A stretch of DNA of 64,000 nucleotides from the sequence record MZ475897.1; one strand, given 5' to 3'. This document shows, in pieces, positions 18,065 through 62,482 of this stretch. The notes below the pieces were generated by a model that had not been told where the DNA came from, ran no database searches, and saw nothing but the letters and a program-made list of their open reading frames with translations. How positions within the stretch are numbered: the stretch's first letter is position 1; each line of letters begins with the position of its first letter. The position numbers and the translations under genes were made by a program.

Positions 18065-19239
18065 TGAGGCAGATAACCGAAGTACAACAGGCTGTGCGTG
18101 TCGAACTTGTAGTTAAGGCTGAACGCCGTTAACTTGTTGATGTTCGCACCGTGGAAACCCATCGAATGTTTTTCTTCACGCCCGATAGACTTCAACAGCT
18201 CACGCATGATACGCAGATCGAGATGTGCGCTCAGTTCACGCTCAACAGGCTTGGCCAGTGACATACTGTCCTGCACGTTACCTGCGTCAGTACCAAACTT
18301 GAACTTGATCTCTTTCTTCTTCAAGATGATCTTCGCACTGGTGTTACCCTTCTTCTCAATCAACGTCGAGATGTTGGTGAACGGAGCAGACAGGTCACCT
18401 TTAACAACAACGCCAATCAACGGCTTGCCGAGTTGCACCAACATGTTATCCATGTAACGGTAATCTTCATCACTTGCCTGAATCGGAGGCAGCGTCAAAA
18501 CGAATGAATCAGACTCGGCGGCAAACGAACTACTGTCAACGTGGAACGTTACCTTCTCTTCACCGCAGAAGCGATAAACGAGGTCGAACATCGCACCTGT
18601 CAGACTGAAACGGAACGGTTCTGCTTTCTTTTTCAGATCGCAGGTATAACGAGAAGACGTCCAGTGACCCGGACTTTGAATCTTCATCGATTTACCATCA
18701 CACACAACACGACAGATAATGGTCTGGTTAGTGATCGTATCTTTCATGCTAGTCAGACGCACACCCTGAGTCATTGCGTCGATTACTTCACGCGACATAG
18801 GATGCCCGCCAGAGATGTGGTGCTTGAGACCCTGCTCAACCATAGGGATCTGTTCGTCAGACAGCGGACGGATTTTGAAATCAGCTTTGTACTTACCGTT
18901 CTGCTCTGCGATAGCAACTTGCTTACCGTCAAACGTCAAGGTCAATTCTTTACGCTTGGTGATCAGACCGTTCAGACTGTTCGGGTCGATGTTAAACACC
19001 GTATCAGTGTCAGCAGTTGCGCCAGGTACCTGATAAGCAACGAACGTATCAGGCGTACGGCCCAGAACGAAAACATCCGACTTGTAGGTTACGATCAGAT
19101 GGATGTGCGTCAGCTTATCATCTGATTCAGAGAAACGAGTAACGCTATCAACACGCTTTAAAATGTCAGACAACAACGTGCCTGTAAGCGTAATGTTGCA
19201 GGACTTTGATGGTTTTTTAGGAAGTCGGCAGGTCTTCAT
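18061..19239 (-). CDS. Putative sliding clamp (DNA polymerase III beta-like)
   Basis: 392 aa, the size of a three-domain beta clamp; alternating beta/alpha pattern resembling DnaN (e.g. VFNIDPNSLNGLITKRKELTLTFDGKQVAI..F.I.PLSDEQIP); near the polymerase, with a DnaX-like gene in the same window. Confidence 0.6.
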   Translation of the reverse strand: MKTCRLPKKPSKSCNITLTGTLLSDILKRVDSVTRFSESDDKLTHIHLIVTYKSDVFVLGRTPDTFVAYQVPGATADTDTVFNIDPNSLNGLITKRKELTLTFDGKQVAIAEQNGKYKADFKIRPLSDEQIPMVEQGLKHHISGGHPMSREVIDAMTQGVRLTSMKDTITNQTIICRVVCDGKSMKIQSPGHWTSSRYTCDLKKKAEPFRFSLTGAMFDLVYRFCGEEKVTFHVDSSSFAAESDSFVLTLPPIQASDEDYRYMDNMLVQLGKPLIGVVVKGDLSAPFTNISTLIEKKGNTSAKIILKKKEIKFKFGTDAGNVQDSMSLAKPVERELSAHLDLRIMRELLKSIGREEKHSMGFHGANINKLTAFSLNYKFDTHSLLYFGYLPQ

Positions 19240-19501
19240 TTTTGTCCTCTAAAACAAATTGGAGAATACCCTCAATGTTTACAGCTTTCAGTTGCTGTCC
19301 TGTCTGCATCAACAGACCATTGAGCACGCCGAGTAAATCAGCGCTGTGGCAATTGGGTGCAATCTGATGAACGAAAATATCGTCAGGGATATCACCAGGA
19401 TTAAGCTGCCAAGCGGTACGCAAGGCAGCTCCCATGAATGACGGTCGTTCCACCAGTTGCTTGTTCAGGAAAGAACAAACATCTTCGGCGCTCAACATCA
19501 T
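19217..19501 (-). CDS. Small hypothetical protein
   Basis: 94 aa; overlaps the polymerase stop by 4 nt. Confidence 0.6.
   Translation of the reverse strand: MMLSAEDVCSFLNKQLVERPSFMGAALRTAWQLNPGDIPDDIFVHQIAPNCHSADLLGVLNGLLMQTGQQLKAVNIEGILQFVLEDKNEDLPTS
19276..19284 (-). promoter_or_regulatory. Motif A variant CTGTAAACA
   Basis: 37 nt upstream of the clamp-like gene start. Confidence 0.4.
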
Positions 19502-22500
19502 TTCTTCGTAATCCTCTTGACTGCGTTCTTGAGGAGACTGCGGCTGATTTTGATTTTCTTCTTCGCATCACCAGCAGCTGCGGCAGCTTTCTTGGCCTTC
19601 TCTTCGGCTTCGTATGCTTCCCACTGCTTGATGTTCTTCGGAAGTTCTTTCTTCCACAGATCGATGTTCTTCTGATCTTTCTTGGTCAGAGGATTCACTT
19701 TGCCCATAGAACGAATCTTGATGCCATTAGCCCACAGTTGCTTCTGCATCCACGTGGACATGAGATGGTACTGGTCTTCCATGATGCTATCAAGTTTCTT
19801 ATCGACGTCGAGGTCAGCTTCACCCAACTCATCACGCTTCTGCTCAAGGCCAGCACGAATATGCTTCCTGAGTTGTTCGTAAGAGAAGTCCCAGCCTTCA
19901 ACGTCTTTCTCTGATGCACCGATCTCAAAGTCGATCTCAGGCACAGAGGTGAACTCAAACCCTGGATGACGTTTCTGTACAAGTTCGACCACTGCACTTG
20001 TCATGGCACGCTCAATCATATCAAGCGCGAGGAAAATCCAATCATAGTGACAGTCAACGGTCAAGGAGTCATGTACCGATACGTTCATATCAAAGTCAGG
20101 ATAGACACCGTTTGCTTTCCAGTACTCAAACTTCATGCGGTCCAGAATACGAATCGCACTCATCATCAAGTCAGAACCAAAGCCCTGAACTGGACTGTTT
20201 ACCGCACGACGGTTACATGCAGCATGAACCATGTTCGCGTCTTTATGCGACTCAGGTAACATGAAGCCCCACAGGTAACGACGACGACCAACAGGCGATT
20301 CAACGAAGAAGTTCTGATGAGCAAAATTTTGAATCTTATCGAACCACTTCAAGCCGACAGGGAAGCGTTTAAGGAACTTGCCTTTGATCTCTTCGATCTC
20401 ACCAACTTCACGTCCTGTTGACTTCGCAAGACCTTTGTTACCCTGCTGGTAGATCAGACCGAAGATTACTGTTTTAACCGCGTTACGTACGGACTTTGTT
20501 ACATCCATTACGTTTGGAATACCGAAGAAGTATGCGGCGTTAATCTTATGCACGTCACCTTCTGCTTCTACGCGGTGTTTAATCCACGGGTCTGGCACGG
20601 TACGATAGCGATGACGTAGCTCACGACCTTGTTCGAATACGTCTGCTACGCCTTGGTCGCCTGAGATGATTGACCAACCTCTAACTTCGTGCGCTGAGTA
20701 GTCGACCTTGATTAACAGGCGATTCTTACGCGCAATCAGAATACGTTTGATCAACTTACCCATCTCGCTACGACTCGGAACCTGTTGCAAGTTCGGGTCA
20801 GATGCAGATGTACGACCTGTCACAACTTTTAGATAGCTGTACGTTGGTCGAATCGAACGATCATGCTTGAAGTCCTCACTCTCGCCCCACAGCTTGAGAA
20901 GGCTGTTAACGTAGGCGTTCTTGAGTTTGTACGCTTTACCTAACTTTGTATACAGCGCAACAAGAGGAAGTTCTTTGTACGCCTCTTGGAAGTCTTTATC
21001 GAGCTTCGCAGACTTCTTACCGTTATCACGGAGTTGCTCACCTTCCTTGAGAGGCTTTAAGCGCATCACATCGATGAACAGGATTTGCTTATGCTCCTGC
21101 TTCGACATATCGAACTTCGTGACCTCGACTTTGCCCATAAGACCCATCTTAGGAACATTGTCGTCTCGGCATATCACGGCGTTCGCTGCTTTGACCTCAG
21201 GACTCGACATGAACTCGCGTTCAACGTTTCGAATCTCTTCATTGATTGGACTGTTTGGCAGGTTGAGCTTAAACAGGTAATCAATGTCAGCACCAGCGCC
21301 TGTTGTTTCCAAGACACTGAACGCATGAATCTGGTCGGAGATTTGCTCACCCACCAGCGACTCATACTTCGTGTACTTGCTATCGACGCCACGCTTAATC
21401 TGAGACAGATAGATGCGGAACGGAACGATAACGTCAAGCCCAGCATACTCCTGCACAGCTTCGTCAAGGTCAGAGTCGGCGATTGTCGCACGCATCTCCT
21501 TACCAAACGATACTTCGTGATAAACAGTCGTACCGTACTGCATTGCGAGGTTGGCTAAGTTGTAATAGCCTTGGCCCGTAACGGTCAACAGCGACTTCGC
21601 GTTTTCATCGTTACCAAACTCACCTGCTTGAATATCCCAGACGTCGGCGCAATAACTACGAATGCCAAAGTTGGAACGCATTACGTTCAGGTCAAACTTC
21701 GCATTCGTATAGATCTGAACCTTGTTGTCGTTGTCTTCGAAGTAGTCACGGAACATATCACTAATTCGACGCAACTCTTTACCGCTGAACGGACTGTCTC
21801 TGTGATAGATTGGAATCACATAGGCCGTCTCACCGTCGCACGACAACTGCACGGTCTGAATCTTGTTTTTAATTCGATTCAGGTTCTCGGTTTCTGTATC
21901 GACTGCGACCAGCTTAGCACGCTTCATCTTTTTCAAGATCTTTTCAAGCTGCTTAACTTTGGTCACATACACCAGCTTCCAGTTGCGGTCTTTACCGCAG
22001 GTCACTGGCTTAATCGCATAACGCATACCCTTGTTAAGCCACGGCAACATCCAACGTGCCATGTAACCCAGAGTATACGACGATGCGTTTATCACAGCAG
22101 GGTTCAAGACTGTGTGATAACTAACGTTCGGCAGATGGATGAAGCTGTGCTTCTTGCCATCGTGCTTGAGCTTGGTGGGTATCTCAACTCCGTACCAGTG
22201 CTCATAGTGTTCTTTTGAATACTGAATCCTTTCATTGTTGAGCGCCTTGAACGGAGCTTTACCAAAAGTCAGAACGTAGTCTGGCTTGTAGTCAACAATC
22301 AGATCCCGAATACGATCAGCAAATGCTTGGTCAGCATCTTCCTTATACTGCTCAGACTTATCATACGTCTTGAACATGTTGTAGCTAACAACGAGGAAGT
22401 TCCAATCGTCTAACGTGGTCTTTGTCGGGAACACGTCTTCGAGATACTGCATCTGATTCAGGAACAATTCGCCTTCTGTGCTGCTAAAGATCTTACCGTT

Positions 22501-22662
22501 ACGCAGGTCCTCAGTTGGCATGTGATCAAGGACAAGTAGTGCTTTACCGCCTTTGGCGCTTTTACTAACGCCTTTTAAAATACGAACCCCGTCATAAGTC
22601 TGCACGTCGGCAAACTGTTCAGGTGGATCGAAGTCAAGAGCAACGTGCTTGATTTTCACCAT
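19498..22662 (-). CDS. polA: Family A DNA polymerase with N-terminal uracil-DNA-glycosylase-like domain and 3'-5' exonuclease
   Basis: 1054 aa; Exo I VDTET, Exo II NAKFD, Exo III YAGLD; TGRTS; motif A DYSAHEVR; motif B RNAVKTVIFGLIY; NSPVQG; motif C VHDS; N-terminal PDYVLTFGKAPFKAL pattern of family-4 UDG. Confidence 0.93.
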   Translation of the reverse strand: MVKIKHVALDFDPPEQFADVQTYDGVRILKGVSKSAKGGKALLVLDHMPTEDLRNGKIFSSTEGELFLNQMQYLEDVFPTKTTLDDWNFLVVSYNMFKTYDKSEQYKEDADQAFADRIRDLIVDYKPDYVLTFGKAPFKALNNERIQYSKEHYEHWYGVEIPTKLKHDGKKHSFIHLPNVSYHTVLNPAVINASSYTLGYMARWMLPWLNKGMRYAIKPVTCGKDRNWKLVYVTKVKQLEKILKKMKRAKLVAVDTETENLNRIKNKIQTVQLSCDGETAYVIPIYHRDSPFSGKELRRISDMFRDYFEDNDNKVQIYTNAKFDLNVMRSNFGIRSYCADVWDIQAGEFGNDENAKSLLTVTGQGYYNLANLAMQYGTTVYHEVSFGKEMRATIADSDLDEAVQEYAGLDVIVPFRIYLSQIKRGVDSKYTKYESLVGEQISDQIHAFSVLETTGAGADIDYLFKLNLPNSPINEEIRNVEREFMSSPEVKAANAVICRDDNVPKMGLMGKVEVTKFDMSKQEHKQILFIDVMRLKPLKEGEQLRDNGKKSAKLDKDFQEAYKELPLVALYTKLGKAYKLKNAYVNSLLKLWGESEDFKHDRSIRPTYSYLKVVTGRTSASDPNLQQVPSRSEMGKLIKRILIARKNRLLIKVDYSAHEVRGWSIISGDQGVADVFEQGRELRHRYRTVPDPWIKHRVEAEGDVHKINAAYFFGIPNVMDVTKSVRNAVKTVIFGLIYQQGNKGLAKSTGREVGEIEEIKGKFLKRFPVGLKWFDKIQNFAHQNFFVESPVGRRRYLWGFMLPESHKDANMVHAACNRRAVNSPVQGFGSDLMMSAIRILDRMKFEYWKANGVYPDFDMNVSVHDSLTVDCHYDWIFLALDMIERAMTSAVVELVQKRHPGFEFTSVPEIDFEIGASEKDVEGWDFSYEQLRKHIRAGLEQKRDELGEADLDVDKKLDSIMEDQYHLMSTWMQKQLWANGIKIRSMGKVNPLTKKDQKNIDLWKKELPKNIKQWEAYEAEEKAKKAAAAAGDAKKKIKISRSLLKNAVKRITKK

Positions 22663-24795: not shown

Positions 24796-27700
24796 TTACA
24801 CTGACTTGTCTTTCGACGCAGTGAGTTTCAGTTTGGTCAACGCAGCCAGACACTGTTTCATGTTCGGGATGCTGTAGCCAGCTTTCTGAATACGGTTGAT
24901 ACGCGCTTTCGCACCAGCAACGTTCTTCACGAAGCTAATCCACATACCAGATGACAGGCTGAACGTACCGAACTTACGAGTGTTCGGGATTTTCGTTCCC
25001 ACGAAGCGTTTCACTTTCGGGTTAGTCGCTAGGTCGAACATGATACGCAGACGATCTTCCATCACCATCGGATATGCTTTGATGTGCTTAACATCTTTCG
25101 CAGAGGTGTGACGAATCTGGAAGAACTGTTTCAACTGCGACTGTGCCTTAACAGCCAGCTGGTAGTTGAAGCTCAGCTTAGGCGTAGACTCATCGAAGAA
25201 GTCCTGAACGAACTCCAGACGGCGAGAGGACGGACCGTCAAAGTCCAGCTTCTTAGCCTCGATGAAGTCCAAGAACTTCTCAAAGTCAGAGTAGTACGCG
25301 CAATCGATATACACGTAATCCCCGAACTCGGTGAACTCGAAGTCCTTGAGCGCTTTCGCATCTGGGTCGGTCGCATCTGCGTACAGAGCAACGAAGCCGT
25401 TGTACACTGTAGGCGTCAGTTCCAGAGACATATCGGTACCGTCGTCCAGTGTAACAGCAGCGCCACGAACAGCCTTGCGCACTTTGTTGTCCAGCGGAGG
25501 AAGTTCAGCAGCCTTACGACGACGAACACGGGCAGCTGCCTGCTCTACGCCCTCGTTGATTGGCTTACCTTCTTCTTTGTTCGCTTTACGTTGAGTAACG
25601 CGGGCGTTCTTACGCTCTTGAGCCTCAACTTTCTTCTCGGTTGCTTTCGAGTCGGCAGTTTGAGTCTCATCGGTCACGGTGTCTTCGACTTCAACGCGCT
25701 TGGCTTCTGCTTCAACACGCTTACGGTCTTTAGCTGTCGCCCACGGCTTACGCACTTCAAAGAAGCGTTTCAGATCAGCAGGAGATACCTTACCAGCGTA
25801 ATGCACTTTGTTCGCAGGCACAGTAACGATTTCCTCGCCACCAGCAAGACGAACACGCACGGTACTGATAGGGCTGTCAGCACGCAGCTTACCGTCAGCA
25901 GTACGAACCGTAACGCTCACGATGATACCGTTACCGAACTCAGTCACAACAGGTGCACGGTTCAGCGCGTCCTTCACGTTCTCACCTGAGGAGAAGTTCT
26001 GGTTGCGTGCCCAATCGAGCAGACGTTCCAGTCCCCAGTTATGACGGTCTGGGATCTTCTGGTTCGCAACGATAGGTACCTGCTCCATGATACGGAAGTC
26101 ACGCAGAGCCGGAGTGGCAGGCAGCGGCTGCATTGCTGCAATCGTTGTCTTACGCATCTCTTGGAACTCTTGCGCTTCAATATCGTTCAGGTCACGCTTG
26201 GCCAGGAAGTACGGTTTAAAGTCTTCCATCGTGTTGTTATCGATCAACAGACTTGCATTCATCTTGATTGGAGCAAGCTGATACTGGTCGAGTTTTTCGT
26301 AGCGCTGGTTACCTTTCTCGTCGAAACGAGTTTTCTCCAGCGTCTTCCACATCAGACGTGCAACCTTACCTACTTCAAGAGTCTTGTTCGTCATCACCCA
26401 ATCGATGAACACGGCTTCGCGTTTCATATCGCCGGGCTTACCGTTCTCATCAAGCACGGCAGCAGCAACGTCAGGACGGAAGATACGCGCAGTAGACTGA
26501 TCGTATGTACCTGGAGACCACGGGGTGTCACAGCGAATGATACGACTACCCATCTGCATGTTGTGGCCTTCACTGATTGCCTGTTCGTTAGCAATCAGAA
26601 TCTGCACACGGTCATCGGTCTTGAACGCGTCAAGGTTGGCCTCTTTGTTCTGGCCTAACTTACCGACTTCACCGTGATACACAACAGCGACCTTCTTGTA
26701 GTTCTCAGGCAGAGAGTTATAGATTGCGTTTGCAGCACGCGTGTAGCGAGTGAACACAATCAGCTTGCCCTGAACCTCTGGCTTCCAGTAGTCTGGGTCT
26801 TCCGGAGGTGGAACCATTGAAGGCGGCAGTGTTTGACGCTGGAACTCTTCGGACTGCTTACGTGCCAGATACTTCTGACCCTGATAGACAGCCATGTCAA
26901 GTTCACGAGGAGTAACGCCCTGCGTCCAGTTGAAGATTTGCTGCTCTTTGACCATCGGGTCACGTTCAGGCTGCACTTCAAAGTGCTTGCGAATACGCTC
27001 GATGATAGTCAGGACTTTTGCAGAAACGAACTTGGTGACACCAGCGTTTTCAAACGTCAGACGAGCAACGTCATCGCCCATCGGGTCTGTCAGCATCATC
27101 TCCATGCGCTGGAAGTACATGTTGAGGTCGGCGTTACCTGCGAGCAATGCGCCCAGGTCATCACCTTCTTCAATATCATCTTCATCAATGTCGTCAGAGG
27201 CCGTAGTTTCTGCACCGTCCTCTTCGTCATCCTCACCCGCAGATGCAGCACGGCGTTTGGCGTTGTTAGCAGCTTCCTGCAACTTCTCCAACACCTGAGC
27301 ATACATCGCGTTATACACCTCTTGGTGCAGCGATGAGTTAGGCACAGTCGGGTCATCAATCTCAACCTGAATGAAGGTATCGATTGGGTTCGGCAACATG
27401 AACGCCCAGTTCTTACGCTTGAACGAGATGAACGCCGTGTGGTTAGACATACGCGAGTGAGCACGACGAATCATTTCAATGTCATCTTTCGCGCCGTCGT
27501 ATGCAACGTCGAGAGAGTCACCGAACATCGCAGGCGTCATCAGTGCAGCCTGACCAACAATGTCACGCACGCGGTCAGTTACCAGAGTACCAGTAGCGAT
27601 ACGCGCATAGCGAACAGATGGTGCGGTGAATACTGCTTTGGTGTTGAAGTGCACCTGAGAGCCAGACTGGCCGCCAGAGAAGTTCTTAACCTTGTGCGAC

Positions 27701-46400: not shown

Positions 46401-47114
46401 TCAAACTCCCTGATTAGCAACGTAGGTGTCGGTGATGTTCGCAGTCTTCTCAACGTTACCGCGAATGTAACCTATCTCAAACACCTGCACATTATGTTTG
46501 ACCACAGCTTCACCGTCAGTCTCACACGCACCGCTATGAATGTCCAAGAAAGCCTGACACAATCGGTCAGTAACAGGCTTAGCTAAGATCTTCATCAGCG
46601 TATGCTTCTGGACAGCAGTCATCTTGATCGGCAGTGCATCAATCTCACGCTCGATAGACTTGCGCCCGCCACCGTACACCCAACGACAAATAGTGTTAGT
46701 GATTGGCTTCTGGTGCGTCTTGCTCGGCAGCTTATAGATGAATGTCATCAGGCTATAGAACAAGCTGCCATCGACTGCGCGTTTCTTCAAGTCATCAAGA
46801 TAAGCACCGACAGGTGACAGCTTACCTTTCTGAGGAACTAATTGGTCGAGCTTGAGATCAACATCAAGCCCGTAGCGGTTAAGCACCTCAGAGTGACCGA
46901 ACACAAAGACGATGTGCTCTGGCAGATCACGAATCGCAATCGCGTTGCGACTGTAATCACGCGAGCCTACAATGAAAATGTATTTGCGGTATTTCTTCGC
47001 TGGATTTAAGAACCCATTGGACGGCACAAAGGTGACGCGCTGTGCTTCACCTTTCTTTTTAAGCCATCCCATCACCTGCTCTGGGCTCTGTCGCGTTACT
47101 GCAATTACTGGCAT
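46401..47114 (-). CDS. Hypothetical protein
   Basis: 237 aa; coupled to sbcC. Confidence 0.7.
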   Translation of the reverse strand: MPVIAVTRQSPEQVMGWLKKKGEAQRVTFVPSNGFLNPAKKYRKYIFIVGSRDYSRNAIAIRDLPEHIVFVFGHSEVLNRYGLDVDLKLDQLVPQKGKLSPVGAYLDDLKKRAVDGSLFYSLMTFIYKLPSKTHQKPITNTICRWVYGGGRKSIEREIDALPIKMTAVQKHTLMKILAKPVTDRLCQAFLDIHSGACETDGEAVVKHNVQVFEIGYIRGNVEKTANITDTYVANQGV

Positions 47115-49435
47115 CAGATCACCTTACGACTAAGAGACGACACACCAGACTTCTTAGTGACCGTCCACTGATTGTTAGAGAAGTGCTCAACATCGTTTGG
47201 AGTTATCCAGTAGATGTTAGGAATGATCTGCTTGAGAATCGGCAGGAAGTTGTTGACGATGTGACTGCTCACAGCAGGACTGCAACTGTTGTCCGGCTCA
47301 TCAAGAACGATGAAGTTGGTGCGGCGGTTAGCTGGGATGAACGGCATGATCGCTACAGCAAACAGCAATCTAAAGCAGTTCGTCTCTGCACCACTCATGA
47401 TACCAATGTCCGTAGTCTTCTTAGAGATCATACGAGTCACGGTAGCACCAACACCCTGCTTGGTCGTGAACAAATCAAAGTGCATCGGTTCAGGGAACAC
47501 CAGCGAGGAGTATTCGTTCAGCTTCTTCTCAATCTGTTTCAAACGACCTTCGACGGCTTTCAGTTTCAGCGCGTTGTTCGAGTATGCTTTGTATAGCACC
47601 TCAAACACTTTGCGCTTATCGATCAGAGGCTGCAAGTCCGCGAGCTTACCACGAAGTTCCTTGAGAGTCTCCTCGTAGTGCTCATGCTCTTGGATGCGCA
47701 TCTTGATCTTCTGGGCCTTGTGCTCTTTCTTATCAATGTCGTCTGTCAGCTTCTCAACTTCCTGAGTAACCTTCTTGAACTCGGCATCAAGCAGATAGAA
47801 GTCGTTGGAAGGTTTGCCTACAGCTTTGAGCGCACCAAGCAATTCACGCAACGTCTCAAGGTCTTCGATGCGACCCTCAATGACTTTACGTTTCTTCTTC
47901 GGCTTCTCAATCTTCTTCGGCTTCTTCAATGAATCGAGGCGAGTGTTGAGCTTGTCATACTTCTTGGCAGACTCAAACTGCTCTTCCATTTTATCCAACA
48001 GCTTACCGACCTTCTTCATACGAGCTTGAAGTTCTTCACGGTCGAGCTTCGGCTTCTTGACCTTGTTGTCCTTGAGAGCCTGGAGTTCAGCAGACAACGC
48101 ATAGTAGTCCAGAGCTTCGATGCAGTCATCAACAGTAGCCCGTGCACGGGTTGCCGCTTTAGCCATCGACTTCATATCAACATCCTGAGAACACGTAGGG
48201 CACTTTGTACCTTCAACATGTTCGGACAGATGCTCAAATGCTTTTACGATTGCTCGCGCTTCTGCTCGCGCATCACGAGCTTCTTCCTCAGTTCGTTTAG
48301 GACTTTTGAGCTTAGATAGCCGCTTTTCCAATTGTTTGACTGAGGACTGCCATGCTCGGTATTCTTCTTGCTGGCCATCAATCTCCTCCAGGAGCTGTTC
48401 GATTTCTTCCTCTTCGGCCACCAGCTTGCGATGCTTCTTGCTTGCGGCTTTGCTATCAAAGTCCGAGCAATCGCCGAGTTCTTCAAGTTGCTTGTGCAGC
48501 TTTTTCAGATCTGCCTTATACTCTTCCAGCAGTTCCTCATACTCGGCGTACATGTCGTGCAGTGCAAGGTCGGAGCGGAGTTTCTTTAGCTCCTGTTTGG
48601 GATCATCTGCCTCAATGCCAAGCGTGTCGAGTTGATGCTTAATCTTCTCATACTTCTTGGCAGTGTTGCGTTCAGTGCTTACTTCAACCAGACGCTCGGA
48701 CAAGTTGTTGCGCTTGGCCTTGAGCTTGTCGATCATGCTGATGATACTTTTCAGCGTGTTCTTTTCTTCTGCATGGATGTCCAGCGCGTTTTGCTTACGC
48801 TGCATAACGTCCAGCATATCGGCCAGGCCCTTAGATTCTGTCTCGGCATCTTTTGCCAGATCAAGTTTCTTCTTGAGCGCTGCGCGAATGTTATCGAACA
48901 CATCGAGGTTGAACAAGCTGGTCAGGTACTTGAGACGATCAGCAGGAGCAGCACGCTGGAACGGATGAGAGATCTGCGACTGGATGTAGCAGTAGCTGTA
49001 GAACTCATCTTTAGACAGAGGCCAGTGCTTCTGTACCCAAGAGCGTGCAACGTCCTGACGACCAACCTTCTGGTCTTCGCCGTTGTAGAATACCTGATAC
49101 TTGGTAGACGACTGCACGACACGAACAATGCCACCAAGCGGTGACTTCCATGACAGGTCAATCGAGCTACCCTTGCCGAGCATGTTACCCTTGTCTTTCT
49201 TTTTCATCGCAAGGGGATCAGCTTCATACAGCAAGGTAGGTATTGCAGCGAACAGCATACTCTTACCTACGCCGTTCGTGTTTTCCTTAACGTCTGGACT
49301 ATCGAGGTTCTTTCCGCAGATTGTTGCGAAGCCCTCTTTGTCAAGGCCATCAATGTCGAGTTCCTTGTACACGCCAACGTCGCGCAAGTGAATCTCTTTC
49401 AGGCCAATACCGTGTTGCTGTTTTACTTTCGCCAT
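47114..49435 (-). CDS. sbcC: SbcC/Rad50 (T4 gp46-like) ABC ATPase
   Basis: 773 aa; Walker A NGVGKS, Q-loop YIQSQ, long coiled coil with CPTC zinc hook, signature MSGAE, Walker B/D-loop IVLDEPD. Confidence 0.9.
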   Translation of the reverse strand: MAKVKQQHGIGLKEIHLRDVGVYKELDIDGLDKEGFATICGKNLDSPDVKENTNGVGKSMLFAAIPTLLYEADPLAMKKKDKGNMLGKGSSIDLSWKSPLGGIVRVVQSSTKYQVFYNGEDQKVGRQDVARSWVQKHWPLSKDEFYSYCYIQSQISHPFQRAAPADRLKYLTSLFNLDVFDNIRAALKKKLDLAKDAETESKGLADMLDVMQRKQNALDIHAEEKNTLKSIISMIDKLKAKRNNLSERLVEVSTERNTAKKYEKIKHQLDTLGIEADDPKQELKKLRSDLALHDMYAEYEELLEEYKADLKKLHKQLEELGDCSDFDSKAASKKHRKLVAEEEEIEQLLEEIDGQQEEYRAWQSSVKQLEKRLSKLKSPKRTEEEARDARAEARAIVKAFEHLSEHVEGTKCPTCSQDVDMKSMAKAATRARATVDDCIEALDYYALSAELQALKDNKVKKPKLDREELQARMKKVGKLLDKMEEQFESAKKYDKLNTRLDSLKKPKKIEKPKKKRKVIEGRIEDLETLRELLGALKAVGKPSNDFYLLDAEFKKVTQEVEKLTDDIDKKEHKAQKIKMRIQEHEHYEETLKELRGKLADLQPLIDKRKVFEVLYKAYSNNALKLKAVEGRLKQIEKKLNEYSSLVFPEPMHFDLFTTKQGVGATVTRMISKKTTDIGIMSGAETNCFRLLFAVAIMPFIPANRRTNFIVLDEPDNSCSPAVSSHIVNNFLPILKQIIPNIYWITPNDVEHFSNNQWTVTKKSGVSSLSRKVI

Positions 49436-51721: not shown

Positions 51722-53002
51722 CTACTTCTTCTTTTTCTTTTTCTTCTTGGGCTTTTCGTCTTCGTCGTCATCTTCGACTTCGTTACCCAATTTCACAGAC
51801 AGTTTGCCTTCATAAATGTCGGCCATCAGACTGAGGATAGTTGATTCCAACATAATGTCAGCAGGCACGGAGGTACTGTTGAATGCTACCTCTGCTTCTG
51901 CCAGTGCTTTCTGCAAATAGATCAGGCAAACAAGATTGACCTTAATCTTCTCTTGCTTAACCATATTCAGGAACATCTTGAGGCCAGCAGACTGCCACTT
52001 GTTTGTGTCAGAGTAATGACCAAGCGCACCGTGAAGTACCCAGCGTGCTTTCGCTACGATTGCTCGTGGGTTGTTTGCTTCACGCAGGAACTGAATGACG
52101 CCGATAAGGTCCATCGCAATGAACGCACCGATAGTCTGAACTGCTTTGCCTTCCATTTCAATTTCTGGATCGGCTGCTGCAAGTTCTGCCACCAGCTTCT
52201 TATCAAACGCTTCACCACCTTTAACTGACGCAAAGATGTTTTGCATCATCGTGATTGCACCACGCATCTGACCACCAGCATACTCTGCTACTTGGTGCAG
52301 TGCGGATTCGGCTTTATCACGCGCTTTGTCTTTCTTCGGCATGATGCCAAGCGTGTCTGCAATCTCGGACAGTCGCTTCGCAATGATGTCGGTAGGAATC
52401 GGCCTGATAGGAAGTTGTGTCATACGACTGATCATCGTATCTTTCATCTTCTCAGGGTTCGTGGTCACAAAGATGAACACGACATGAGCTGGGGGTTCCT
52501 CAATGATCTTGAGGAACTTCGATTCGGCTGCGCTCGACATAAGGTGCGCTTCATCGAGAATGAACACACGGCGCTTGAACGTAGCCGCCAGTGGTGCTGA
52601 GTCAACGATACGCTGTGAGCCTTCAACTTTACCAGAGTCGCTACCCATATCGAATTCTTGCACGTCAGGGTGCTGGCCGTTATTGTACACCATGCGACAC
52701 GAGGCACACTTACCACACGCGCTAAACGAATCACAGTTGATGTACTTTGCGACGAGACGCGCAAACGTTGTTTTACCACTACCCAGATGGCCTGTAATGA
52801 TCATCGTTGATGGAACTGTTTTCGACTTCTGCCAACCGTTCATGATCTTAACGATGTGGTCTTGACCTACATAGTCTTCGATGCGTTTCGGTCGAAACTG
52901 AGCGGCAAAGTTTACCGTAGTCAGTTCAGTAGAAGATTCGGACTTGGAACTATCTGAACCAAAGTCGCGTTTCTTCTTCTTTTTCTTTTCTTCTTTCACC
53001 AT
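51722..53002 (-). CDS. dnaX: DNA polymerase III gamma/tau-like clamp loader subunit (gamma-sized)
   Basis: 426 aa; RP..+.D.VGQ, GHLGSGKTTFAR, CGKCASC zinc module, FILDEAH, LKIIEEPP, TMISR. Confidence 0.9.
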   Translation of the reverse strand: MVKEEKKKKKKRDFGSDSSKSESSTELTTVNFAAQFRPKRIEDYVGQDHIVKIMNGWQKSKTVPSTMIITGHLGSGKTTFARLVAKYINCDSFSACGKCASCRMVYNNGQHPDVQEFDMGSDSGKVEGSQRIVDSAPLAATFKRRVFILDEAHLMSSAAESKFLKIIEEPPAHVVFIFVTTNPEKMKDTMISRMTQLPIRPIPTDIIAKRLSEIADTLGIMPKKDKARDKAESALHQVAEYAGGQMRGAITMMQNIFASVKGGEAFDKKLVAELAAADPEIEMEGKAVQTIGAFIAMDLIGVIQFLREANNPRAIVAKARWVLHGALGHYSDTNKWQSAGLKMFLNMVKQEKIKVNLVCLIYLQKALAEAEVAFNSTSVPADIMLESTILSLMADIYEGKLSVKLGNEVEDDDEDEKPKKKKKKKK

Positions 53003-56997: not shown

Positions 56998-57008
56998 ATA
57001 TCACCTCG

Positions 57009-58025
57009 TTACTTGTACTGTCCCGTCACAACAAAGACGAGAGAATCAGGTTTCTTCCGCCCGTTAACAATGAGATACTTGAACGGACGTGTGGGTTCAA
57101 GCTGGCCTTCGACCACTTGAGTGATTGCAATATCTTTGACTTCACCAAAGGTCAGAGCGTTGTCCATCTGATCAAAGGAGAAGGCATTTGAAAGCGAAAC
57201 AGAGTTGTGAGACACTACCGTAATACCTTCAGGCTTCTTGGAGGCGCTACGCTTCGAGTCCAGCCACTTCTGCCAATCGAACATCGCATGGTTCATTGAA
57301 CGAGAGACGAGCGAACGGGGCACTTTCCCTTTCAACGATTTGCGAAACTCGGTGACAACCTCCGACACAGGAGGACCGGCGTTAACGCGACGACGATCTT
57401 TCAGAATCGTGCGCATCTTATCCGACCAGTAGTTGTAGGCATCAACCCGAATCTGAATGTATTCTTCAAGGCGCTGAGCCTGTTCGAGGGTACACTCAAT
57501 TTCGAACGTCACCTGACTTCCACGTTCTGTACCGTTGTGTTTGATAGCAGCTTTCTCTGCTTTCGTCTCGCTGATCAGTTTTTCTTTTACACACGCCGCC
57601 CATGCATATGCAAATGTGAGACGCATGTCAGGATAACGGTTCATCACCTGCACGCGTGTTTGAAGCAACAACGGAATGGCATAGCCCAGATGACAACGAC
57701 GATCAATAAAGGCAGAACGGAGTTCTCCAATATCTTTGTCCAGCTCGTTGAGGTCATTGAACAAATAACCCGAGTCACGGTACGACTGAGAAATGTGGTT
57801 ACCTTCACGAAGTACATCATCGATGGTCAAACCTTTTTCAACGATGCTGTTGTATGCTTCTTCCAAAGTAACATCAGGCCAAGTGCGATAACCTGTTTGG
57901 TCTAAAGTAAGATGACGGAAGCAATACAATTCATACATGTGCAAAAAGTCCGCGAATGGCAGACTTTTGGGATATACGAATTTTTTAATCACCTTCTTCG
58001 GTTTGATAACTGCTTTCTTGATCAT
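57009..58025 (-). CDS. Two-domain protein: unknown N-terminal half plus a TnpB-like WED/REC region without RuvC
   Basis: Residues ~171-338 are collinear with the TnpB N-terminal pattern (T.EQ...L, YN, SE..T..+K, V....+..S+, P, beta-rich WED strands); the stop falls where RuvC-I would begin. Confidence 0.5.
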   Translation of the reverse strand: MIKKAVIKPKKVIKKFVYPKSLPFADFLHMYELYCFRHLTLDQTGYRTWPDVTLEEAYNSIVEKGLTIDDVLREGNHISQSYRDSGYLFNDLNELDKDIGELRSAFIDRRCHLGYAIPLLLQTRVQVMNRYPDMRLTFAYAWAACVKEKLISETKAEKAAIKHNGTERGSQVTFEIECTLEQAQRLEEYIQIRVDAYNYWSDKMRTILKDRRRVNAGPPVSEVVTEFRKSLKGKVPRSLVSRSMNHAMFDWQKWLDSKRSASKKPEGITVVSHNSVSLSNAFSFDQMDNALTFGEVKDIAITQVVEGQLEPTRPFKYLIVNGRKKPDSLVFVVTGQYK

Positions 58026-59715
58026 TGCGTTCTCGCTGGAGTTTGGCGGCTATTTTGAGATATTCTCTATTTACAGTTTCTGGGTCTGTAGCGAACCCAC
58101 GCTTAGTGAACAGGTTACGGCGCACGCTACCCATGCTATATCCGTTATCCCAAAGTTTCATGAATACCAAACAGTTGTGTGTAGGCTCCATGAATGGTTT
58201 TTCTTTCAATGCGATCTCGCCTGAATATTTAGTCAGTAGAATCGCACCGTCAAATTCAGCACTGCACCACTCAGCCTCAGCCAAAATCTTCAACAGGTTA
58301 TAATTCTCCATCCCCTGAATCATGTGGCTGAGAACGCTGTACTGATCTTTTTTATACCTAGACACAGGCATTTTGTGAGAGCACTCGGAATCGTTCTTGA
58401 AGTAGTAACTACCTGATCGTGAGTAAGCACTCATACGAATGCGCTCACACAATTCAGATACCACCAGAGCGGCCGGTTTGAAAATCTCTTTCCACTTATC
58501 CCAAATACGATCGGCGTAACTGATAAGCTCACGCTCGTTCATATTACCTTTCTTAGCTGCATTCTGAACTTTTGTGTCCATGACCAGTTGACGGAAAATA
58601 TCCGTCATCATCGCACTTTGTTCCTCATTATCAGCACAGGTCTCAAAAGACTGTTTAAACCATTTCTGGTTGCTCCACCCACTGTATATGCCGCCGTAGT
58701 TCAACGTCTTGGCAGTACCGCGGGTGATGCGCAATTCTTTCGCGATCTGATCATGATTAAGAGTTTCAAGTTCAGGACAATCCAATCCGTACCTAGCCAT
58801 CAGGTCAAGCAGCAAAACTATCTGGGCGTTCGGCATATCAAAGTTGCGACCATAAGAGTGATCGAAACAGAGTAGCTTAACCACCTTAGGCAGAGCAGCC
58901 GCTGTACCAAACAAACGACTGCCAACATCGTTCATCGCGTAGCTGTCATAAAACTCCACCAGCCTGTCATTTGGATTGTCATTGACAAGGCGCAACCCGT
59001 TCTTACATATCCGTTTTAAGAAAGCATCGAGACGCATGTGAAGATTTTTCTTGCGATTGGTATGCGCATTCTTTTTGATATCAAGGAAACGATCAAGATA
59101 GAATCGGTACGGGCGTTGATTCGCCTGAGCCTTTTTAATCAGATCGATAACTTCGCTGTTTCTGACCTTGTGGAAGTTAAAGTTCCCAGGACGCACAAAA
59201 GGTTTAGCCTTTATAGGGACCTGAAGTGCCGCTTCAACCAAATCTTCTTCGTTCTCAAAGAGAGGCCTTCTGCGCAACGGTTTAAGGAGATTGTACATCG
59301 GCTCCTTAAACATAAACAGCTCCGATATTTCATCGGATAAAGCACGCGACAGGGAATACTTACGAGCGATCCCCTTAATGTAGTCGAATCGCGTTTTGTT
59401 CACCTTTCGGTTCAACCACAACTCCACGGAATACTCTTTGTGGTATATCATGGTGTAGCGCAATTTTTCATGAGCCAGCATGTACGTGTAGGTGACTAAG
59501 GTCTCGTTATACACGTTCGTTTTGTCTAAAACTCGGGACTTATCGATCAAATGGATGAAAAACCACGCCAAACTTTCGTAAAACTTATCCGATTTAGCCT
59601 TCGGAGGCTTAGGGCACGAATAAATCATGTCCCAGAAATACTTATGAAAGGATTTAGGTACCGCGCCCACCCATCCTGGGGGCACAGCTTTCTTCCCGTA
59701 CACGGGTTTGGCCAT
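57985..59715 (-). CDS. Divergent PolA-fold polymerase-like protein without a recognisable exonuclease domain
   Basis: 576 aa; GSRLFG, motif A-like FDMPNAQIVLL, motif B-like RGTAKTLNYGGIY, IQG.E, motif C-like EFDG, in PolA order. Confidence 0.6.
   Translation of the reverse strand: MAKPVYGKKAVPPGWVGAVPKSFHKYFWDMIYSCPKPPKAKSDKFYESLAWFFIHLIDKSRVLDKTNVYNETLVTYTYMLAHEKLRYTMIYHKEYSVELWLNRKVNKTRFDYIKGIARKYSLSRALSDEISELFMFKEPMYNLLKPLRRRPLFENEEDLVEAALQVPIKAKPFVRPGNFNFHKVRNSEVIDLIKKAQANQRPYRFYLDRFLDIKKNAHTNRKKNLHMRLDAFLKRICKNGLRLVNDNPNDRLVEFYDSYAMNDVGSRLFGTAAALPKVVKLLCFDHSYGRNFDMPNAQIVLLLDLMARYGLDCPELETLNHDQIAKELRITRGTAKTLNYGGIYSGWSNQKWFKQSFETCADNEEQSAMMTDIFRQLVMDTKVQNAAKKGNMNERELISYADRIWDKWKEIFKPAALVVSELCERIRMSAYSRSGSYYFKNDSECSHKMPVSRYKKDQYSVLSHMIQGMENYNLLKILAEAEWCSAEFDGAILLTKYSGEIALKEKPFMEPTHNCLVFMKLWDNGYSMGSVRRNLFTKRGFATDPETVNREYLKIAAKLQRERNDQESSYQTEEGD
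58068..58076 (-). promoter_or_regulatory. Motif A CTGTAAATA
   Basis: Exact motif 43 nt upstream of the TnpB-like gene start, inside the upstream CDS. Confidence 0.6.
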
Positions 59716-59749
59716 CTTGGAACCTCAAAAAGCTCGTTCTCTTGGCTGA

Positions 59750-59758
59750 TCTTTACAG
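59750..59758 (-). promoter_or_regulatory. Motif A variant CTGTAAAGA
   Basis: 35 nt upstream of the PolA-like gene start. Confidence 0.5.
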
Positions 59759-59759
59759 A

Positions 59760-60059
59760 ATCCTGCTTGTTCTACGGTCAGAGACTCAAATTGCATCATC
59801 GGATTAGATATGTCTATCTATCTCGGTACAGCTTCGGCATCTTATGCAGCATGAGCGCACTATATTCACAGAAAATAAGCGCCTCGCTCCGAAATCCCTA
59901 GCGCCTAGACGCACAACCCGAGCGAAGAACCATGCCTACGGTATCGAAAACGCGAATACCGCTTTAGCATGGTTATTTGGTGTCAATACGACGATCTTAT
60001 GATCTAAGCGCACTTTGAGACTATTCTTATTGCCGTAGGTCGATTCTGTAGGAAAGTGG
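59760..60059. other. Non-coding, hairpin-rich intergenic region
   Basis: About 300 nt with no ORF in the track; stems TAGATA/TATCTA (59805-20), TCGCTC/GAGCGA (59884-925), AACCATGC/GCATGGTT with inner CGGTAT/ATACCG (59928-74). Confidence 0.45.
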
Positions 60060-61933: not shown

Positions 61934-62482
61934 ATGCGCGTTCTTTCAGGCGACCCGGGTAAGGTTAACTTCGCGCTGTCTGTCCAGGAGTTCAAGGACA
62001 AACGCATTACTGTTATAGGCACCCGCATGTTCCGCAGTCCTATTCAGAACCTGCATTACGATATGCGTCAGCCCACAAAAGAGTTTCTTGCCGAGCTTGA
62101 GCTAATATGGAAACTCTACGGACCGTTCGATGCCATGTGCTTTGAGCGCTTCCAGTCGCGTGGTCTTGGAGGCAACACCATTGAAGCTATCAGCCTCATG
62201 CTCGGTGTCATATCGTTCTTTGCGTTGAAGAAGAAATGCCCTCTTGATTTAATCACTGCTAGTCAGTGGAAAAATGCTTTCAACCGCAGCATGGACCTTA
62301 AAGGCTATTATGCGGAATACAATCTGACGTCAAAGAAAAGCCAAAAAGCAATTCATGAATTTGATGCGAGCCTCATTGGCGTCTATACCTTTTATCGTCA
62401 TTCAGAAATCAAACCGTTTGCAGGCTTCAATCGTATCATCGATGCGTATGTTCCACGATTCCTGGAAGCACCTGTTCTTTGA
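61934..62482 (+). CDS. ruvC: RuvC-like Holliday junction resolvase
   Basis: 182 aa; VLSGDPG (Asp), CFERFQ (Glu), ASQWK, HEFDA (Asp). Confidence 0.8.
   Translation: MRVLSGDPGKVNFALSVQEFKDKRITVIGTRMFRSPIQNLHYDMRQPTKEFLAELELIWKLYGPFDAMCFERFQSRGLGGNTIEAISLMLGVISFFALKKKCPLDLITASQWKNAFNRSMDLKGYYAEYNLTSKKSQKAIHEFDASLIGVYTFYRHSEIKPFAGFNRIIDAYVPRFLEAPVL

What the first reader, a model, noticed from the sequence alone, without database searches (positions are those of the whole stretch)
57985..59715. Second, highly divergent PolA-fold protein lacking proofreading, overlapping the TnpB-like gene
Seen in PolA order: GSRLFG (cf. TGRLS), FDMPNAQIVLL (motif A, Asp kept, Glu to Gln), HDQIAKELRITRGTAKTLNYGGIY (motif B with Tyr at the E. 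coli Phe762-equivalent position, whereas the main polymerase has Phe), MIQGME, and EFDG (motif C Asp kept). No DEDD exonuclease motifs; about 270 unassigned basic N-terminal residues. Sampled lines are AT-richer than structural genes (20/60 GC at 59041-59100 versus 36/60 at 26101-26160). It overlaps the TnpB-like gene by 41 nt and both have motif A. Inference: a specialised polymerase (primer synthesis, protein- or RNA-templated synthesis, or modified-base incorporation). Together with the TnpB-like protein and the adjacent structured non-coding DNA, it may form an undescribed module; that linkage is speculative.
Basis: partly seen in the sequence, partly recalled or inferred. Interest (0 to 1): 0.72.

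Follow-up and report, generated by a model that had tools for sequence, protein, structure and literature searches.

The report
Hidden second polymerase in jumbo phage
A gene annotated only as "hypothetical" in an Erwinia jumbo phage encodes a very divergent DNA-polymerase-I-type enzyme with an intact active site and no proofreading domain, and it belongs to a small unannotated family also found in defence-rich genomic islands of E. coli and its relatives.

Summary
No Pfam, NCBIfam or PADLOC model recognises it. Three independent tests still place it in the family A polymerase / T7-RNAP superfamily:
- Conserved motifs: R267, D293 and K336 are invariant and D489 is at least 90% conserved down to 16-25% identity.
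- Profile-profile alignment to bona fide PolA gives P = 6e-4, against 0.13-0.19 for controls.
- A confident AlphaFold model (pLDDT 86) has 50 best PDB matches that are all PolA or single-subunit RNAPs.

There is no exonuclease domain, and the N-terminal ~230 residues are basic.

The proposed module is not supported. The "TnpB-like" neighbour hits no TnpB model and accompanies the gene only in some jumbo phages. The upstream spacer is not detectably structured or conserved.

New findings: the gene plus its spacer was swapped as a cassette between near-identical phages, under purifying selection. Relatives sit in enterobacterial integrative islands among anti-phage systems.

Most likely it is an active, proofreading-less DNA polymerase used by mobile elements for their own specialised DNA synthesis. 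The role is unproven. A defence or counter-defence polymerase is the main rival.

The parts
57985..59715 (-). 576-aa gene for a divergent, exonuclease-less family A-fold polymerase (QYW05233.1, annotated hypothetical)
   Evidence: ORF; record annotation; phrog_30690 of unknown function, E 3e-95; AF2 pLDDT 85.9; Foldseek top 50 all PolA or ssRNAP; dN/dS 0.12
58906..58923 (-). GSRLFG, counterpart of the PolA T/DxxGR (TGRLSS) motif; R267 invariant
   Evidence: falls on VTGRTSA of the phage's own PolA in relaxed hhalign
58810..58842 (-). Motif A (FDMPNAQIVLL): invariant D293 as metal ligand; Q298 at the position of the PolA steric-gate Glu
   Evidence: beta-strand 290-293 followed by helix 297-308 in the model
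58684..58755 (-). Motif B / O-helix (RGTAKTLNYGGIY): invariant K336, Y340, Y344
   Evidence: Pol gamma and T7 DNAP motif B are the only PDB sequence hits; aligned to motif B of the main PolA; helix 332-345
58306..58323 (-). MIQGME, counterpart of the PolA QG(T/S)AAD motif
   Evidence: aligned to SPVQGFGSD of the main PolA by hhalign; H464, G468 and E470 at least 90% conserved
58246..58257 (-). Motif C (EFDG; EHDG in most relatives): D489 as second metal ligand, at a beta-hairpin
   Evidence: strands 483-486 and 490-493
59026..59715 (-). Basic N-terminal region (residues 1-230, pI 9.9), helical with short strands; no exonuclease signature; function unassigned (DNA binding inferred)
   Evidence: no invariant acidic residue
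59716..60059 (-). 344-bp upstream spacer. It holds a promoter-like conserved box (59844-59869), a conserved leader (59733-59763), an SD GAGG (59723-59726) and one hairpin (59925-59977). It is co-exchanged with the gene
   Evidence: no Rfam hit and no excess folding
58070..60020 (.). Recombination cassette: 59-85% nt identity to pEa_SNUABM_7, against 96-100% in both flanks
   Evidence: dS 1.5 inside versus 0.07 in the neighbouring gene; protein 76% versus 99-100%
57009..58025 (-). It is a jumbo-phage-specific neighbour of unknown function and not a family-wide partner
19498..22662 (-). Comparator only: the phage's canonical family A replicase with a 3'-5' exonuclease domain
   Evidence: PF00476 E 6e-53 and PF01612 E 4e-15

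Best explanation
The gene encodes a catalytically competent nucleotide polymerase of the family A (Pol I / T7 RNAP) fold that has no proofreading domain. It founds a small, fast-evolving family that current profile libraries do not recognise. The family is carried only by mobile elements: several genera of Erwinia/Dickeya jumbo phages at one syntenic locus, a few other phages, and integrative islands of Enterobacteriaceae.

Shown: the fold, the conserved two-Asp / Lys / Arg active site, the absence of an exonuclease domain, purifying selection, and cassette-like exchange of the gene together with its upstream spacer.

Inferred: it extends a 3'-OH on a DNA template with dNTPs. The motif order and spacing and the QN(L/I)P and QG motifs resemble DNA polymerases more than RNA polymerases, and a Gln of the same size sits at the steric-gate position.

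Most likely role (about 35-40%): element-autonomous, specialised DNA synthesis. That would be initiation or priming, or recombination-linked synthesis, for the element's own replication. The basic N-terminal domain would supply DNA binding and the co-exchanged spacer a cognate cis site. This is analogous to the exonuclease-truncated A-family primase-polymerase CcPol-MP of SCCmec.

It does not work as a module with the 338-aa neighbour.
For: Fold: AF2 model with pLDDT 85.9 and pTM 0.83. All 50 best PDB matches are PolA or single-subunit RNAPs, with probability 1.00 over about 320 columns to Klenow, KlenTaq and Bst. BFVD shows the same picture.

Sequence: hhalign against a PolA profile gives P 5.6e-4, against 0.13-0.19 for controls, with motif B and the QG motif in register. 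17 of 18 PDB profile hits are Pol gamma or T7 DNAP motif B.

Active site: R267, D293 and K336 are invariant and D489 is at least 90% conserved over 36 sequences.

Functional gene: dN/dS 0.12.

Mobile-element restriction and replication-type neighbourhoods:
- Syntenic in Yoloswagvirus, Rivsvirus, Alexandravirus and Salmondvirus.
- Near a 5'-3' exonuclease, Thy1 and PhoH, and near UvrD, in other phages.
- Directly after AlpA, or after AlpA plus a weakly Rep_trans-like ORF, in islands.

The spacer and gene are exchanged together.

Precedent for an island-borne exonuclease-less A-family primase-polymerase: PMC7581432, PMC10061031, PMC10201439.
Against: - No biochemical data.
- Pfam PF00476 does not hit, Foldseek E-values are modest (7e-4 to 4e-2) and TM-scores are 0.25-0.30.
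- The phage lineage already has a full replisome: PolA with exonuclease, clamp, clamp loader and helicases in the window, plus a DnaG-type primase in the syntenic contig L008. A replication role would therefore be accessory.
- The spacer has no iterons and no conserved structure, and in islands it is less conserved than the gene.
- One island (L034) already carries a DUF927 replication protein, with the family gene lying among defence genes. In Klebsiella a restriction gene separates it from AlpA-g381.
- No SSB or helicase partner like those of CcPol is adjacent.
Confidence: 0.6

Rival explanations
1. It is a conflict (defence or counter-defence) polymerase. It would be a stand-alone effector that, when triggered, synthesises aberrant or untemplated DNA or hijacks primer termini. 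This is functionally comparable to the reverse-transcriptase-based Abi/DRT systems, but built on an A-family fold. Phage copies would serve inter-phage competition or counter-defence.
For: In bacteria the gene lies in the variable cargo of integrative islands and is flanked by known systems:
- Type I R-M plus Septu
- Avs3a
- Type IV REase, PDC-S71 and RmrAT on both sides in Klebsiella
- Mrr-like nuclease and retron St85
- AbiP2 RT, HipA and toxin-antitoxin genes
- A HEPN gene

There is frequent decay: IS3 truncation, a 294-aa piece in strain 536, and a 194-nt scar in about 500 E. coli genomes. It is a single-gene unit with no constant partner. Distribution is patchy, with cassette exchange in phages.
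Against: - No PADLOC model matches.
- Backbone genes of islands are also enriched next to defence cargo.
- The gene is kept at one syntenic locus across several genera of virulent jumbo phages, which is unusual for an anti-phage gene.
- dN/dS is 0.12 with saturated dS, indicating allele replacement without diversifying selection.
- In RIT691 and Scandinavium it is present without recognisable defence neighbours.
Confidence: 0.3
2. It is a repair or lesion-bypass polymerase of the Pol theta / Pol nu type: a low-fidelity gap-filling or end-joining enzyme that helps the element survive DNA damage or nuclease attack.
For: It is an exonuclease-less A-family fold like Pol theta and Pol nu, which are among the structural matches. 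The window and related contigs carry recombination and repair genes nearby: an RuvC-like resolvase at 61934-62482, SbcC at 47114-49435, and a 5'-3' exonuclease or UvrD in L015 and L014.
Against: There is no helicase domain or Pol theta-specific insertion that could be tested. The neighbours are not consistently repair genes. Nothing explains the island distribution or the co-exchanged spacer.
Confidence: 0.12
3. It is a minimal single-subunit RNA polymerase or RNA primase related to T7 RNAP.
For: The best single Foldseek E-value is to T7 RNAP elongation complexes (7e-4), and POLRMT is also matched. Motif C is (H/F)DG without the third carboxylate, as in T7 RNAP HDS (own knowledge). No phage RNAP is known in this phage group (PMC7412058).
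Against: - The RNAP alignments are poor (rmsd 16-27 A), whereas the Pol I matches are local and tight (rmsd 6.5-7.5 A, probability 1.00).
- In BFVD the DNA polymerases rank above the RNAPs.
- The protein is 576 aa, against about 880 aa for T7 RNAP (own knowledge), leaving little room for a promoter-binding N-terminal domain or specificity loop.
- The Y639-equivalent position varies between Tyr and Phe in the family.
- The phage's own bona fide PolA also has HDS at motif C.
- The phage group uses host RNAP with phage sigma factors (PMC7412058).
Confidence: 0.08

Closest known systems
Family A DNA polymerases (Pol I Klenow/KlenTaq/Bst, T7 DNAP, Pol gamma, Pol theta, Pol nu, DpoZ; Pfam PF00476)
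   Same: The right-hand palm/fingers fold is the same. The order and approximate spacing of the T/DxxGR, motif A, motif B, QG and motif C elements also match, with the catalytic Asp, Asp, Lys and Arg conserved.
   Different: - It is not detected by PF00476 or any NCBIfam model.
- Identity in structural alignments is 9-15%.
- There is no 3'-5' or 5'-3' exonuclease domain.
- A basic ~230-aa N-terminal region of unknown fold relationship is present instead.
- Gln replaces the steric-gate Glu.
- Motif C is (H/F)DG where PolA has HDE.
- In the window's clade the QNLP element has degenerated to AALP.
CcPol-MP primase-polymerase of SCCmec and related Pol-SSB pairs of Bacillota mobile elements (PMC7581432, PMC10061031)
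   Same: Both are A-family catalytic domains without working proofreading, encoded by integrative mobile elements next to recombinase genes. This is a precedent showing that such an enzyme can prime DNA synthesis de novo for element replication.
   Different: - CcPols are recognisably close to the CHEAP subfamily and keep part of the exonuclease domain (PMC10201439).
- They sit in an operon with a small OB-fold SSB and the Cch2 helicase.
- In the window the neighbours (ORFs of 338 aa and 219 aa) have no SSB or helicase Pfam domain, and neighbour sizes differ in the other contexts.
- The hosts here are Gammaproteobacteria and their phages.
- No direct sequence or structure comparison with CcPol could be run.
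T7-like single-subunit RNA polymerases / POLRMT
   Same: They belong to the same superfamily fold and include the best single Foldseek E-value. Motif C has no third carboxylate.
   Different: The protein is much smaller, the global superposition is poor (rmsd about 20 A), and no promoter-recognition elements are evident. The DNA-polymerase-type QN(L/I)P and QG motifs are conserved in the family.
Polymerase-based defence genes (AbiK, AbiP2, DRT reverse transcriptases, retrons)
   Same: These are stand-alone polymerase genes in the same kind of island cargo, sometimes in the same island, and are typically preceded by a long non-coding stretch.
   Different: They have a different fold family (the RT palm) and there is no PADLOC match. 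The upstream spacer here shows no conserved RNA. Any defence phenotype is untested.

Membership tests
Family A DNA polymerase superfamily (PolA / T7 RNAP fold) | Palm/fingers/thumb fold superposable on Klenow-type polymerase domains | tested here: met
   AF2 pLDDT 85.9. Foldseek PDB top 50 are all PolA or ssRNAP, with probability 1.00 over about 320 columns and rmsd 6.5-7.5 A to Klenow, KlenTaq and Bst. BFVD gives the same result.
Family A DNA polymerase superfamily (PolA / T7 RNAP fold) | Motif A and motif C aspartates (metal ligands) conserved | tested here: met
   D293 is invariant and D489 at least 90% conserved in 36 sequences.
Family A DNA polymerase superfamily (PolA / T7 RNAP fold) | Motif B O-helix R...K...[FY]G..[YF] and the T/DxxGR arginine | tested here: met
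   K336 and R267 are invariant. Motif B aligns to motif B of Pol gamma, T7 DNAP and the phage's own PolA.
Family A DNA polymerase superfamily (PolA / T7 RNAP fold) | Significant match to the curated sequence model (Pfam PF00476 DNA_pol_A) | tested here: not met
   No hit at E up to 1 for the candidate, or up to 0.1 for 18 relatives. Profile-profile P = 5.6e-4 against controls of 0.13-0.19.
Family A DNA polymerase superfamily (PolA / T7 RNAP fold) | Template-directed nucleotide polymerisation | not testable with these tools
   Requires an enzyme assay.
Canonical Pol I-type replicase/repair enzyme | 3'-5' (DEDD) or 5'-3' exonuclease domain | tested here: not met
   No PF01612 or PF02739 hit. No conserved acidic residue in the N-terminal region. 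The main PolA in the same window has PF01612.
CcPol-MP type primase-polymerase | Adjacent small OB-fold SSB (MP) and Cch2-type helicase genes | tested here: not met
   The neighbours are ORFs of 338 aa and 219 aa with no SSB or helicase domain. The islands have g381 or no partner.
CcPol-MP type primase-polymerase | A-family catalytic domain with a truncated exonuclease, on an integrative mobile element | tested here: inconclusive
   The mobile-element location and the exonuclease-less A-family core are met. Whether the N-terminal region is an exonuclease remnant could not be resolved, and no CcPol sequence was available for comparison.
CcPol-MP type primase-polymerase | De novo primer synthesis | not testable with these tools
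   Requires an enzyme assay.
T7-like single-subunit RNA polymerase | Full-length architecture with promoter-binding N-terminal domain and specificity loop; RNA_pol Pfam model | tested here: not met
   The protein is 576 aa, there is no RNAP Pfam hit, and the RNAP superpositions have rmsd 16-27 A.
TnpB / IS605 OrfB (claimed for the neighbour 57009-58025) | OrfB_IS605 / RuvC and Zn-ribbon domains, or similarity to solved TnpB/Cas12 structures | tested here: not met
   No such Pfam hit at E up to 10 in any of 5 homologues. The profile search against the PDB gives only Atg23 at E 0.1. The protein ends where a RuvC domain would begin.
Known anti-phage defence systems (PADLOC-DB v2) | Match to a defence protein model | tested here: not met
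   There is no hit for the candidate or P0021, and only DrmC at E 0.003 for P0014, which is not credible.

The most novel reading that the evidence does not exclude
This is a previously unrecognised branch of the A-family polymerase fold that mobile elements use as a stand-alone effector. It could be a self-sufficient initiator-polymerase, with the N-terminal DNA-binding domain and the polymerase in one chain priming replication at a cognate site in the co-inherited upstream spacer. Alternatively it could be the first A-family-fold polymerase acting as an anti-phage or counter-defence system, the PolA counterpart of the AbiK/DRT reverse transcriptases.
Probability: 0.3. Interest if true: 0.85.

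Novelty: new variant of a known kind. Interest (0 to 1): 0.68.

Why it matters
Family A polymerases are among the best-surveyed enzymes. Two recent censuses collected them by Pfam PF00476 tags (PMC10201439) or by sequence and profile searches (PMC12926913), and describe no group like this one. This family matches neither PF00476 nor any other curated model tried here.

The finding shows that a catalytically intact A-family-fold polymerase family has gone unannotated in sequenced jumbo phages. The same is true in E. coli, Klebsiella, Hafnia and Scandinavium islands, where it sits among defence systems. Several records also truncate the gene.

If it primes or initiates replication, it would be a second, independent case after CcPol-MP of mobile elements turning a Pol I fold into an initiator. 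If it is a defence or counter-defence enzyme, it would add a new enzymatic class to phage-bacteria conflict. A compact, exonuclease-free, highly divergent PolA core is also of practical interest as an enzyme scaffold.

Tried and rejected
1. First AF2 model from 10 close homologues: pLDDT 56, unusable. It was replaced by a 36-sequence alignment.
2. Single-sequence and shallow-profile PDB searches gave nothing or E = 2.
4. ncRNA or structured-DNA idea for the spacer: no Rfam hit, z-scores of -1.45 and -1.15, no covarying or conserved structure, and only promoter-like and leader blocks. In islands the spacer is AT-rich and less conserved than the gene. There are no iterons. Rejected as unsupported. 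Only the recurrent 300-700 bp gap remains unexplained.
5. Two-gene module: the phage neighbour (338 aa), the island neighbour (g381) and the Alexandravirus 174-aa ORF are not detectably homologous (hhalign P 0.05-0.48). Rejected.
6. TnpB-likeness of the neighbour: rejected at sequence level.
7. My first reading that about 10% of E. coli genomes carry the gene was wrong. About 500 of the 557 matches are a 194-nt remnant.
8. Diversifying selection as the cause of the local divergence: rejected (dN/dS 0.12, dS saturated). Allelic replacement by recombination fits better.
9. 'Putative helicase', as annotated for the pEa_SNUABM_5 homologue: no helicase domain or fold was found.
Full report
**What the window is.** Nucleotides 57000-60000 are 100% identical to Erwinia amylovora jumbo phage pEa_SNUABM_21 (MZ475897.1, 265 kb), and the window corresponds to record positions 124001-188000. 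Every gene in the record is annotated 'hypothetical protein'. My own annotation of the large ORFs shows:
- A tail sheath gene (9648-11324).
- A helicase (15481-17082).
- A clamp-like processivity factor (18061-19239).
- The canonical family A replicase with a 3'-5' exonuclease domain (19498-22662; PF00476 E 6e-53, PF01612 E 4e-15).
- A 1944-aa SNF2-type helicase (24796-30630).
- An SbcC-like protein (47114-49435).
- A clamp loader (51722-53002).

The phage belongs to the PaBG/Lu11/Yoloswag/Alexandra group. That group is described as using PolA, clamp and clamp loader, plus phage sigma factors with the host RNA polymerase (PMC7412058).

**Observation check.** ORF 57985-59715 (-) encodes 576 aa. 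The 41-nt overlap with ORF 57009-58025, the basic N-terminal region (pI 9.9 for residues 1-230) and the slightly lower GC (0.448 against a window mean of 0.487) are all real.

**Is it a polymerase? Sequence evidence.** Curated libraries do not recognise it:
- Pfam gives nothing relevant at E up to 1.
- NCBIfam and PADLOC give nothing.
- PHROGs gives only phrog_30690, of 'unknown function'.

An exhaustive profile search of 1.84 billion representative proteins found only about 19 further relatives. None of them has a Pfam domain.

In the 23- and 36-sequence alignments, relatives only 16-25% identical share five blocks in this order:
- YYPxYKxAxxGGRLFE..GGFQNLP..VK
- NYD..SSQL.IL
- R...K...YG..F..G
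- LAH.IQG.E
- S.EHDG

From my own knowledge of PolA, these correspond to TGRLSS/PNLQNIP, motif A (DYSQIELR), motif B (RxxAKxxNFGxxYG), QGxAAD and motif C (VHDE). R267, D293 and K336 are invariant, and D489 is at least 90% conserved.

Three statistical tests point the same way:
- The family profile searched against all PDB sequences returns 18 hits, 17 of them Pol gamma or T7 DNA polymerase and all at motif B (best E 0.05).
- hhalign of the family against a profile of 39 bona fide PolAs, collected with the phage's own replicase, gives P = 5.6e-4.
- Reversed-sequence controls and an exonuclease-domain control give P = 0.13-0.19.

In that hhalign alignment, motif B pairs with motif B and HMIQGME pairs with SPVQGFGSD. 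With relaxed settings GGRLFE..Q.LP falls on VTGRTSA..PNLQQIP. The spacing of R, D, K and D is 26/43/153 residues, against 37/76/135 in the phage's own PolA.

**Is it a polymerase? Structural evidence.** A model from 10 close homologues was poor (pLDDT 56). With 36 diverse sequences the model reached pLDDT 85.9 and pTM 0.83.
- Foldseek against the PDB: all 50 best matches are family A DNA polymerases (Klenow, KlenTaq, Bst, Aquifex Pol I, Pol theta, gamma and nu, DpoZ) or T7 RNAP/POLRMT.
- The Pol I large-fragment matches cover about 320 columns at probability 1.00 and rmsd 6.5-7.5 A.
- Against viral predicted structures, the family's own uncharacterised members come first, then phage PolAs, then T7-like RNAPs.

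E-values (7e-4 to 4e-2) and TM-scores (0.25-0.30) are modest, as expected at 9-15% identity with an unmatched N-terminal third. The uniformity of the hit list, together with the sequence evidence, settles the fold. There is no exonuclease domain and no conserved acidic residue upstream of residue 259.

**The proposed module.** The 338-aa neighbour matches no TnpB, RuvC or Zn-ribbon model, even at E up to 10, in any of five homologues. Its profile hits no TnpB/Cas12 structure.

Its C-terminal half superficially recalls the N-terminal part of TnpB, but the protein ends where the RuvC domain would start.

It follows the polymerase gene in the pEa_SNUABM_21/7/35 group, Rivsvirus, Yoloswagvirus, Salmondvirus and metagenomic contig L008. 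It does not follow it in these contexts:
- Alexandravirus, where a 174-aa ORF follows.
- The other phage contigs.
- The bacterial islands.

The phage neighbour, the island neighbour and the 174-aa ORF are not detectably related to one another.

The 344-bp upstream spacer has no Rfam hit, folds no better than shuffled sequence, and has no iterons. It shows only a promoter-like conserved box, a conserved leader and one hairpin.

**New observations.**

(a) Cassette exchange.
- Against pEa_SNUABM_7, nucleotides ~58,070-60,020 (gene plus spacer) are 59-85% identical, while both flanks, including the 338-aa gene, are 96-100% identical.
- Synonymous divergence is saturated inside the block (dS 1.5) against 0.07 next door, and dN/dS is 0.12.
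- So a functional allele was imported from a distant relative, together with its upstream region and without its neighbour.

(b) The family is retained at the same syntenic locus across several jumbo-phage genera, but at only 20-40% identity. By comparison, a neighbour is 68% identical, and the polymerase domain of the main PolA (residues 500-950) is 82-84% identical.

(c) Several records truncate the gene:
- AD1_214: the full ORF is 538 aa.
- JA13_200: annotated as 284 aa, but the ORF is 574 aa and its C-terminal part is 71% identical to P0012.
- The E. coli 536 copy.

(d) Bacterial relatives lie in integrative islands of Klebsiella, Hafnia, Scandinavium, an unclassified Enterobacteriaceae isolate and E. 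coli, at the mutS-ygbA and ychF loci. A backbone of DUF2787, RadC, integrase, AlpA and g381 precedes the gene, and the genes around it are anti-phage systems:
- Type I R-M plus Septu.
- Avs3a.
- A type IV restriction enzyme, PDC-S71 and RmrAT.
- An Mrr-like nuclease and retron St85.
- AbiP2.
- A HEPN protein.

The best Pfam match for g381 is Rep_trans, but far below threshold (E 0.005-0.017). About 500 E. coli genomes carry only a 194-nt remnant, and full-length copies were seen in at least 42 of 5,426 genomes.

**Interpretation.**

What is shown:
- A real gene under purifying selection.
- The family A polymerase fold.
- A complete two-metal active site with the O-helix lysine and the T/DxxGR arginine.
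- No proofreading domain.
- Restriction to mobile elements.

What is inferred:
- DNA-templated dNTP polymerisation. The local structural matches, the BFVD ranking and the QN(L/I)P and QG motifs favour DNA polymerases over RNAPs. A Gln sits at the steric-gate Glu position, and Tyr/Phe variation occurs at the position that senses ribose in T7 RNAP (own knowledge).

For the biological role I commit, at about 35-40%, to element-autonomous specialised DNA synthesis (initiation or priming, or recombination-linked synthesis). The reasons are:
- The conserved syntenic position in virulent phages.
- The position after AlpA in islands.
- The basic N-terminal domain.
- The co-exchange of the gene with its upstream region.
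- The CcPol-MP precedent (PMC7581432, PMC10061031, PMC10201439).

The main rival, at about 30%, is a defence or counter-defence polymerase. This is suggested by defence genes on both sides in several islands and by frequent decay. Repair or translesion synthesis, and RNA synthesis, are less likely.

**Comparison with what is known.**
- The 2023 reclassification collected sequences by PF00476, which this family does not hit.
- The 2026 bacterial survey lists only PolA1, PolA1-like, PolA2/APEX and PolA3.
- CcPol-type enzymes are in Bacillota, are close to the CHEAP subfamily, keep part of the exonuclease domain, and are paired with an SSB and a helicase. None of these partner features is met here.
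- I found no paper describing this family.

I therefore classify it as a new variant (a new, very divergent family) within a known superfamily.

**Verdict.** Interest is moderately high.

Noticed in passing
window 58070-60020, compared with L020 (pEa_SNUABM_7): There is a sharply bounded block of 59-85% nucleotide identity inside otherwise 96-100% identical genomes. It covers exactly the polymerase gene and its upstream spacer. dS is 1.5 inside, against 0.07 in the adjacent gene.
   Followed up: yes
L004 4905-6521 (Dickeya phage AD1); L033 3047-4771 (Dickeya phage JA13); L036 10001-11463 (E. coli 536): Family members are annotated in truncated form: AD1_214 covers only 5469-6521 of a 538-aa ORF, and JA13_200 is annotated as 284 aa of a 574-aa ORF. 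The strain 536 copy is annotated as a 294-aa piece although the nucleotide match spans the full length. I did not establish whether the 536 copy is broken.
   Followed up: partly
L010 6468-7613 and homologues in L016-L019 and L031: The island ORF 'g381' between AlpA and the polymerase-like gene has Rep_trans (rolling-circle replication initiator) as its best Pfam match, but far below threshold (E 0.005-0.017 in 2 of 5 members). It has no PDB hit.
   Followed up: partly
L037 6001-6194 (E. coli ST131) and about 500 other E. coli genomes: A 194-nt unannotated remnant of the 3' end of an island-type family gene persists next to an IS3 element and the integrase at the ychF locus. It is a widespread scar of a degraded island.
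   Followed up: partly
window 59716-60059 and the equivalent positions in L002, L005-L008, L010, L012, L015, L031, L032: Every family member examined is preceded by 300-700 bp without a called gene, in phages and islands alike. No conserved sequence, structure or repeats were found, so the recurrence is unexplained.
   Followed up: partly
window 57009-58025 (-): The 338-aa neighbour has a C-terminal half (FEIECTLEQAQRLEEY..VDAYNYW ... KYLIV ... VTGQYK) that superficially resembles the N-terminal WED/REC part of TnpB, but it stops before any RuvC domain. No model or structure search supports homology, and its fold was not predicted.
   Followed up: partly
window 19498-22662 (-): The phage's canonical PolA has VHDS at motif C where PolA typically has VHDE, and DYSAHEVR at motif A. 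It is flanked by a clamp-like processivity factor (18061-19239) and a helicase (15481-17082).
   Followed up: no
window 24796-30630 (-): A 1944-aa protein has SNF2-related and Helicase_C domains (phrog_21391). This is an unusually large helicase-like gene in the replication region.
   Followed up: no
L016 5598-7433 (-), 9628-11427 (+), 11482-13227 (-): The Klebsiella spallanzanii island carries a GmrSD/SspE-like type IV restriction gene, the candidate system PDC-S71 and RmrAT immediately around the family gene.
   Followed up: yes
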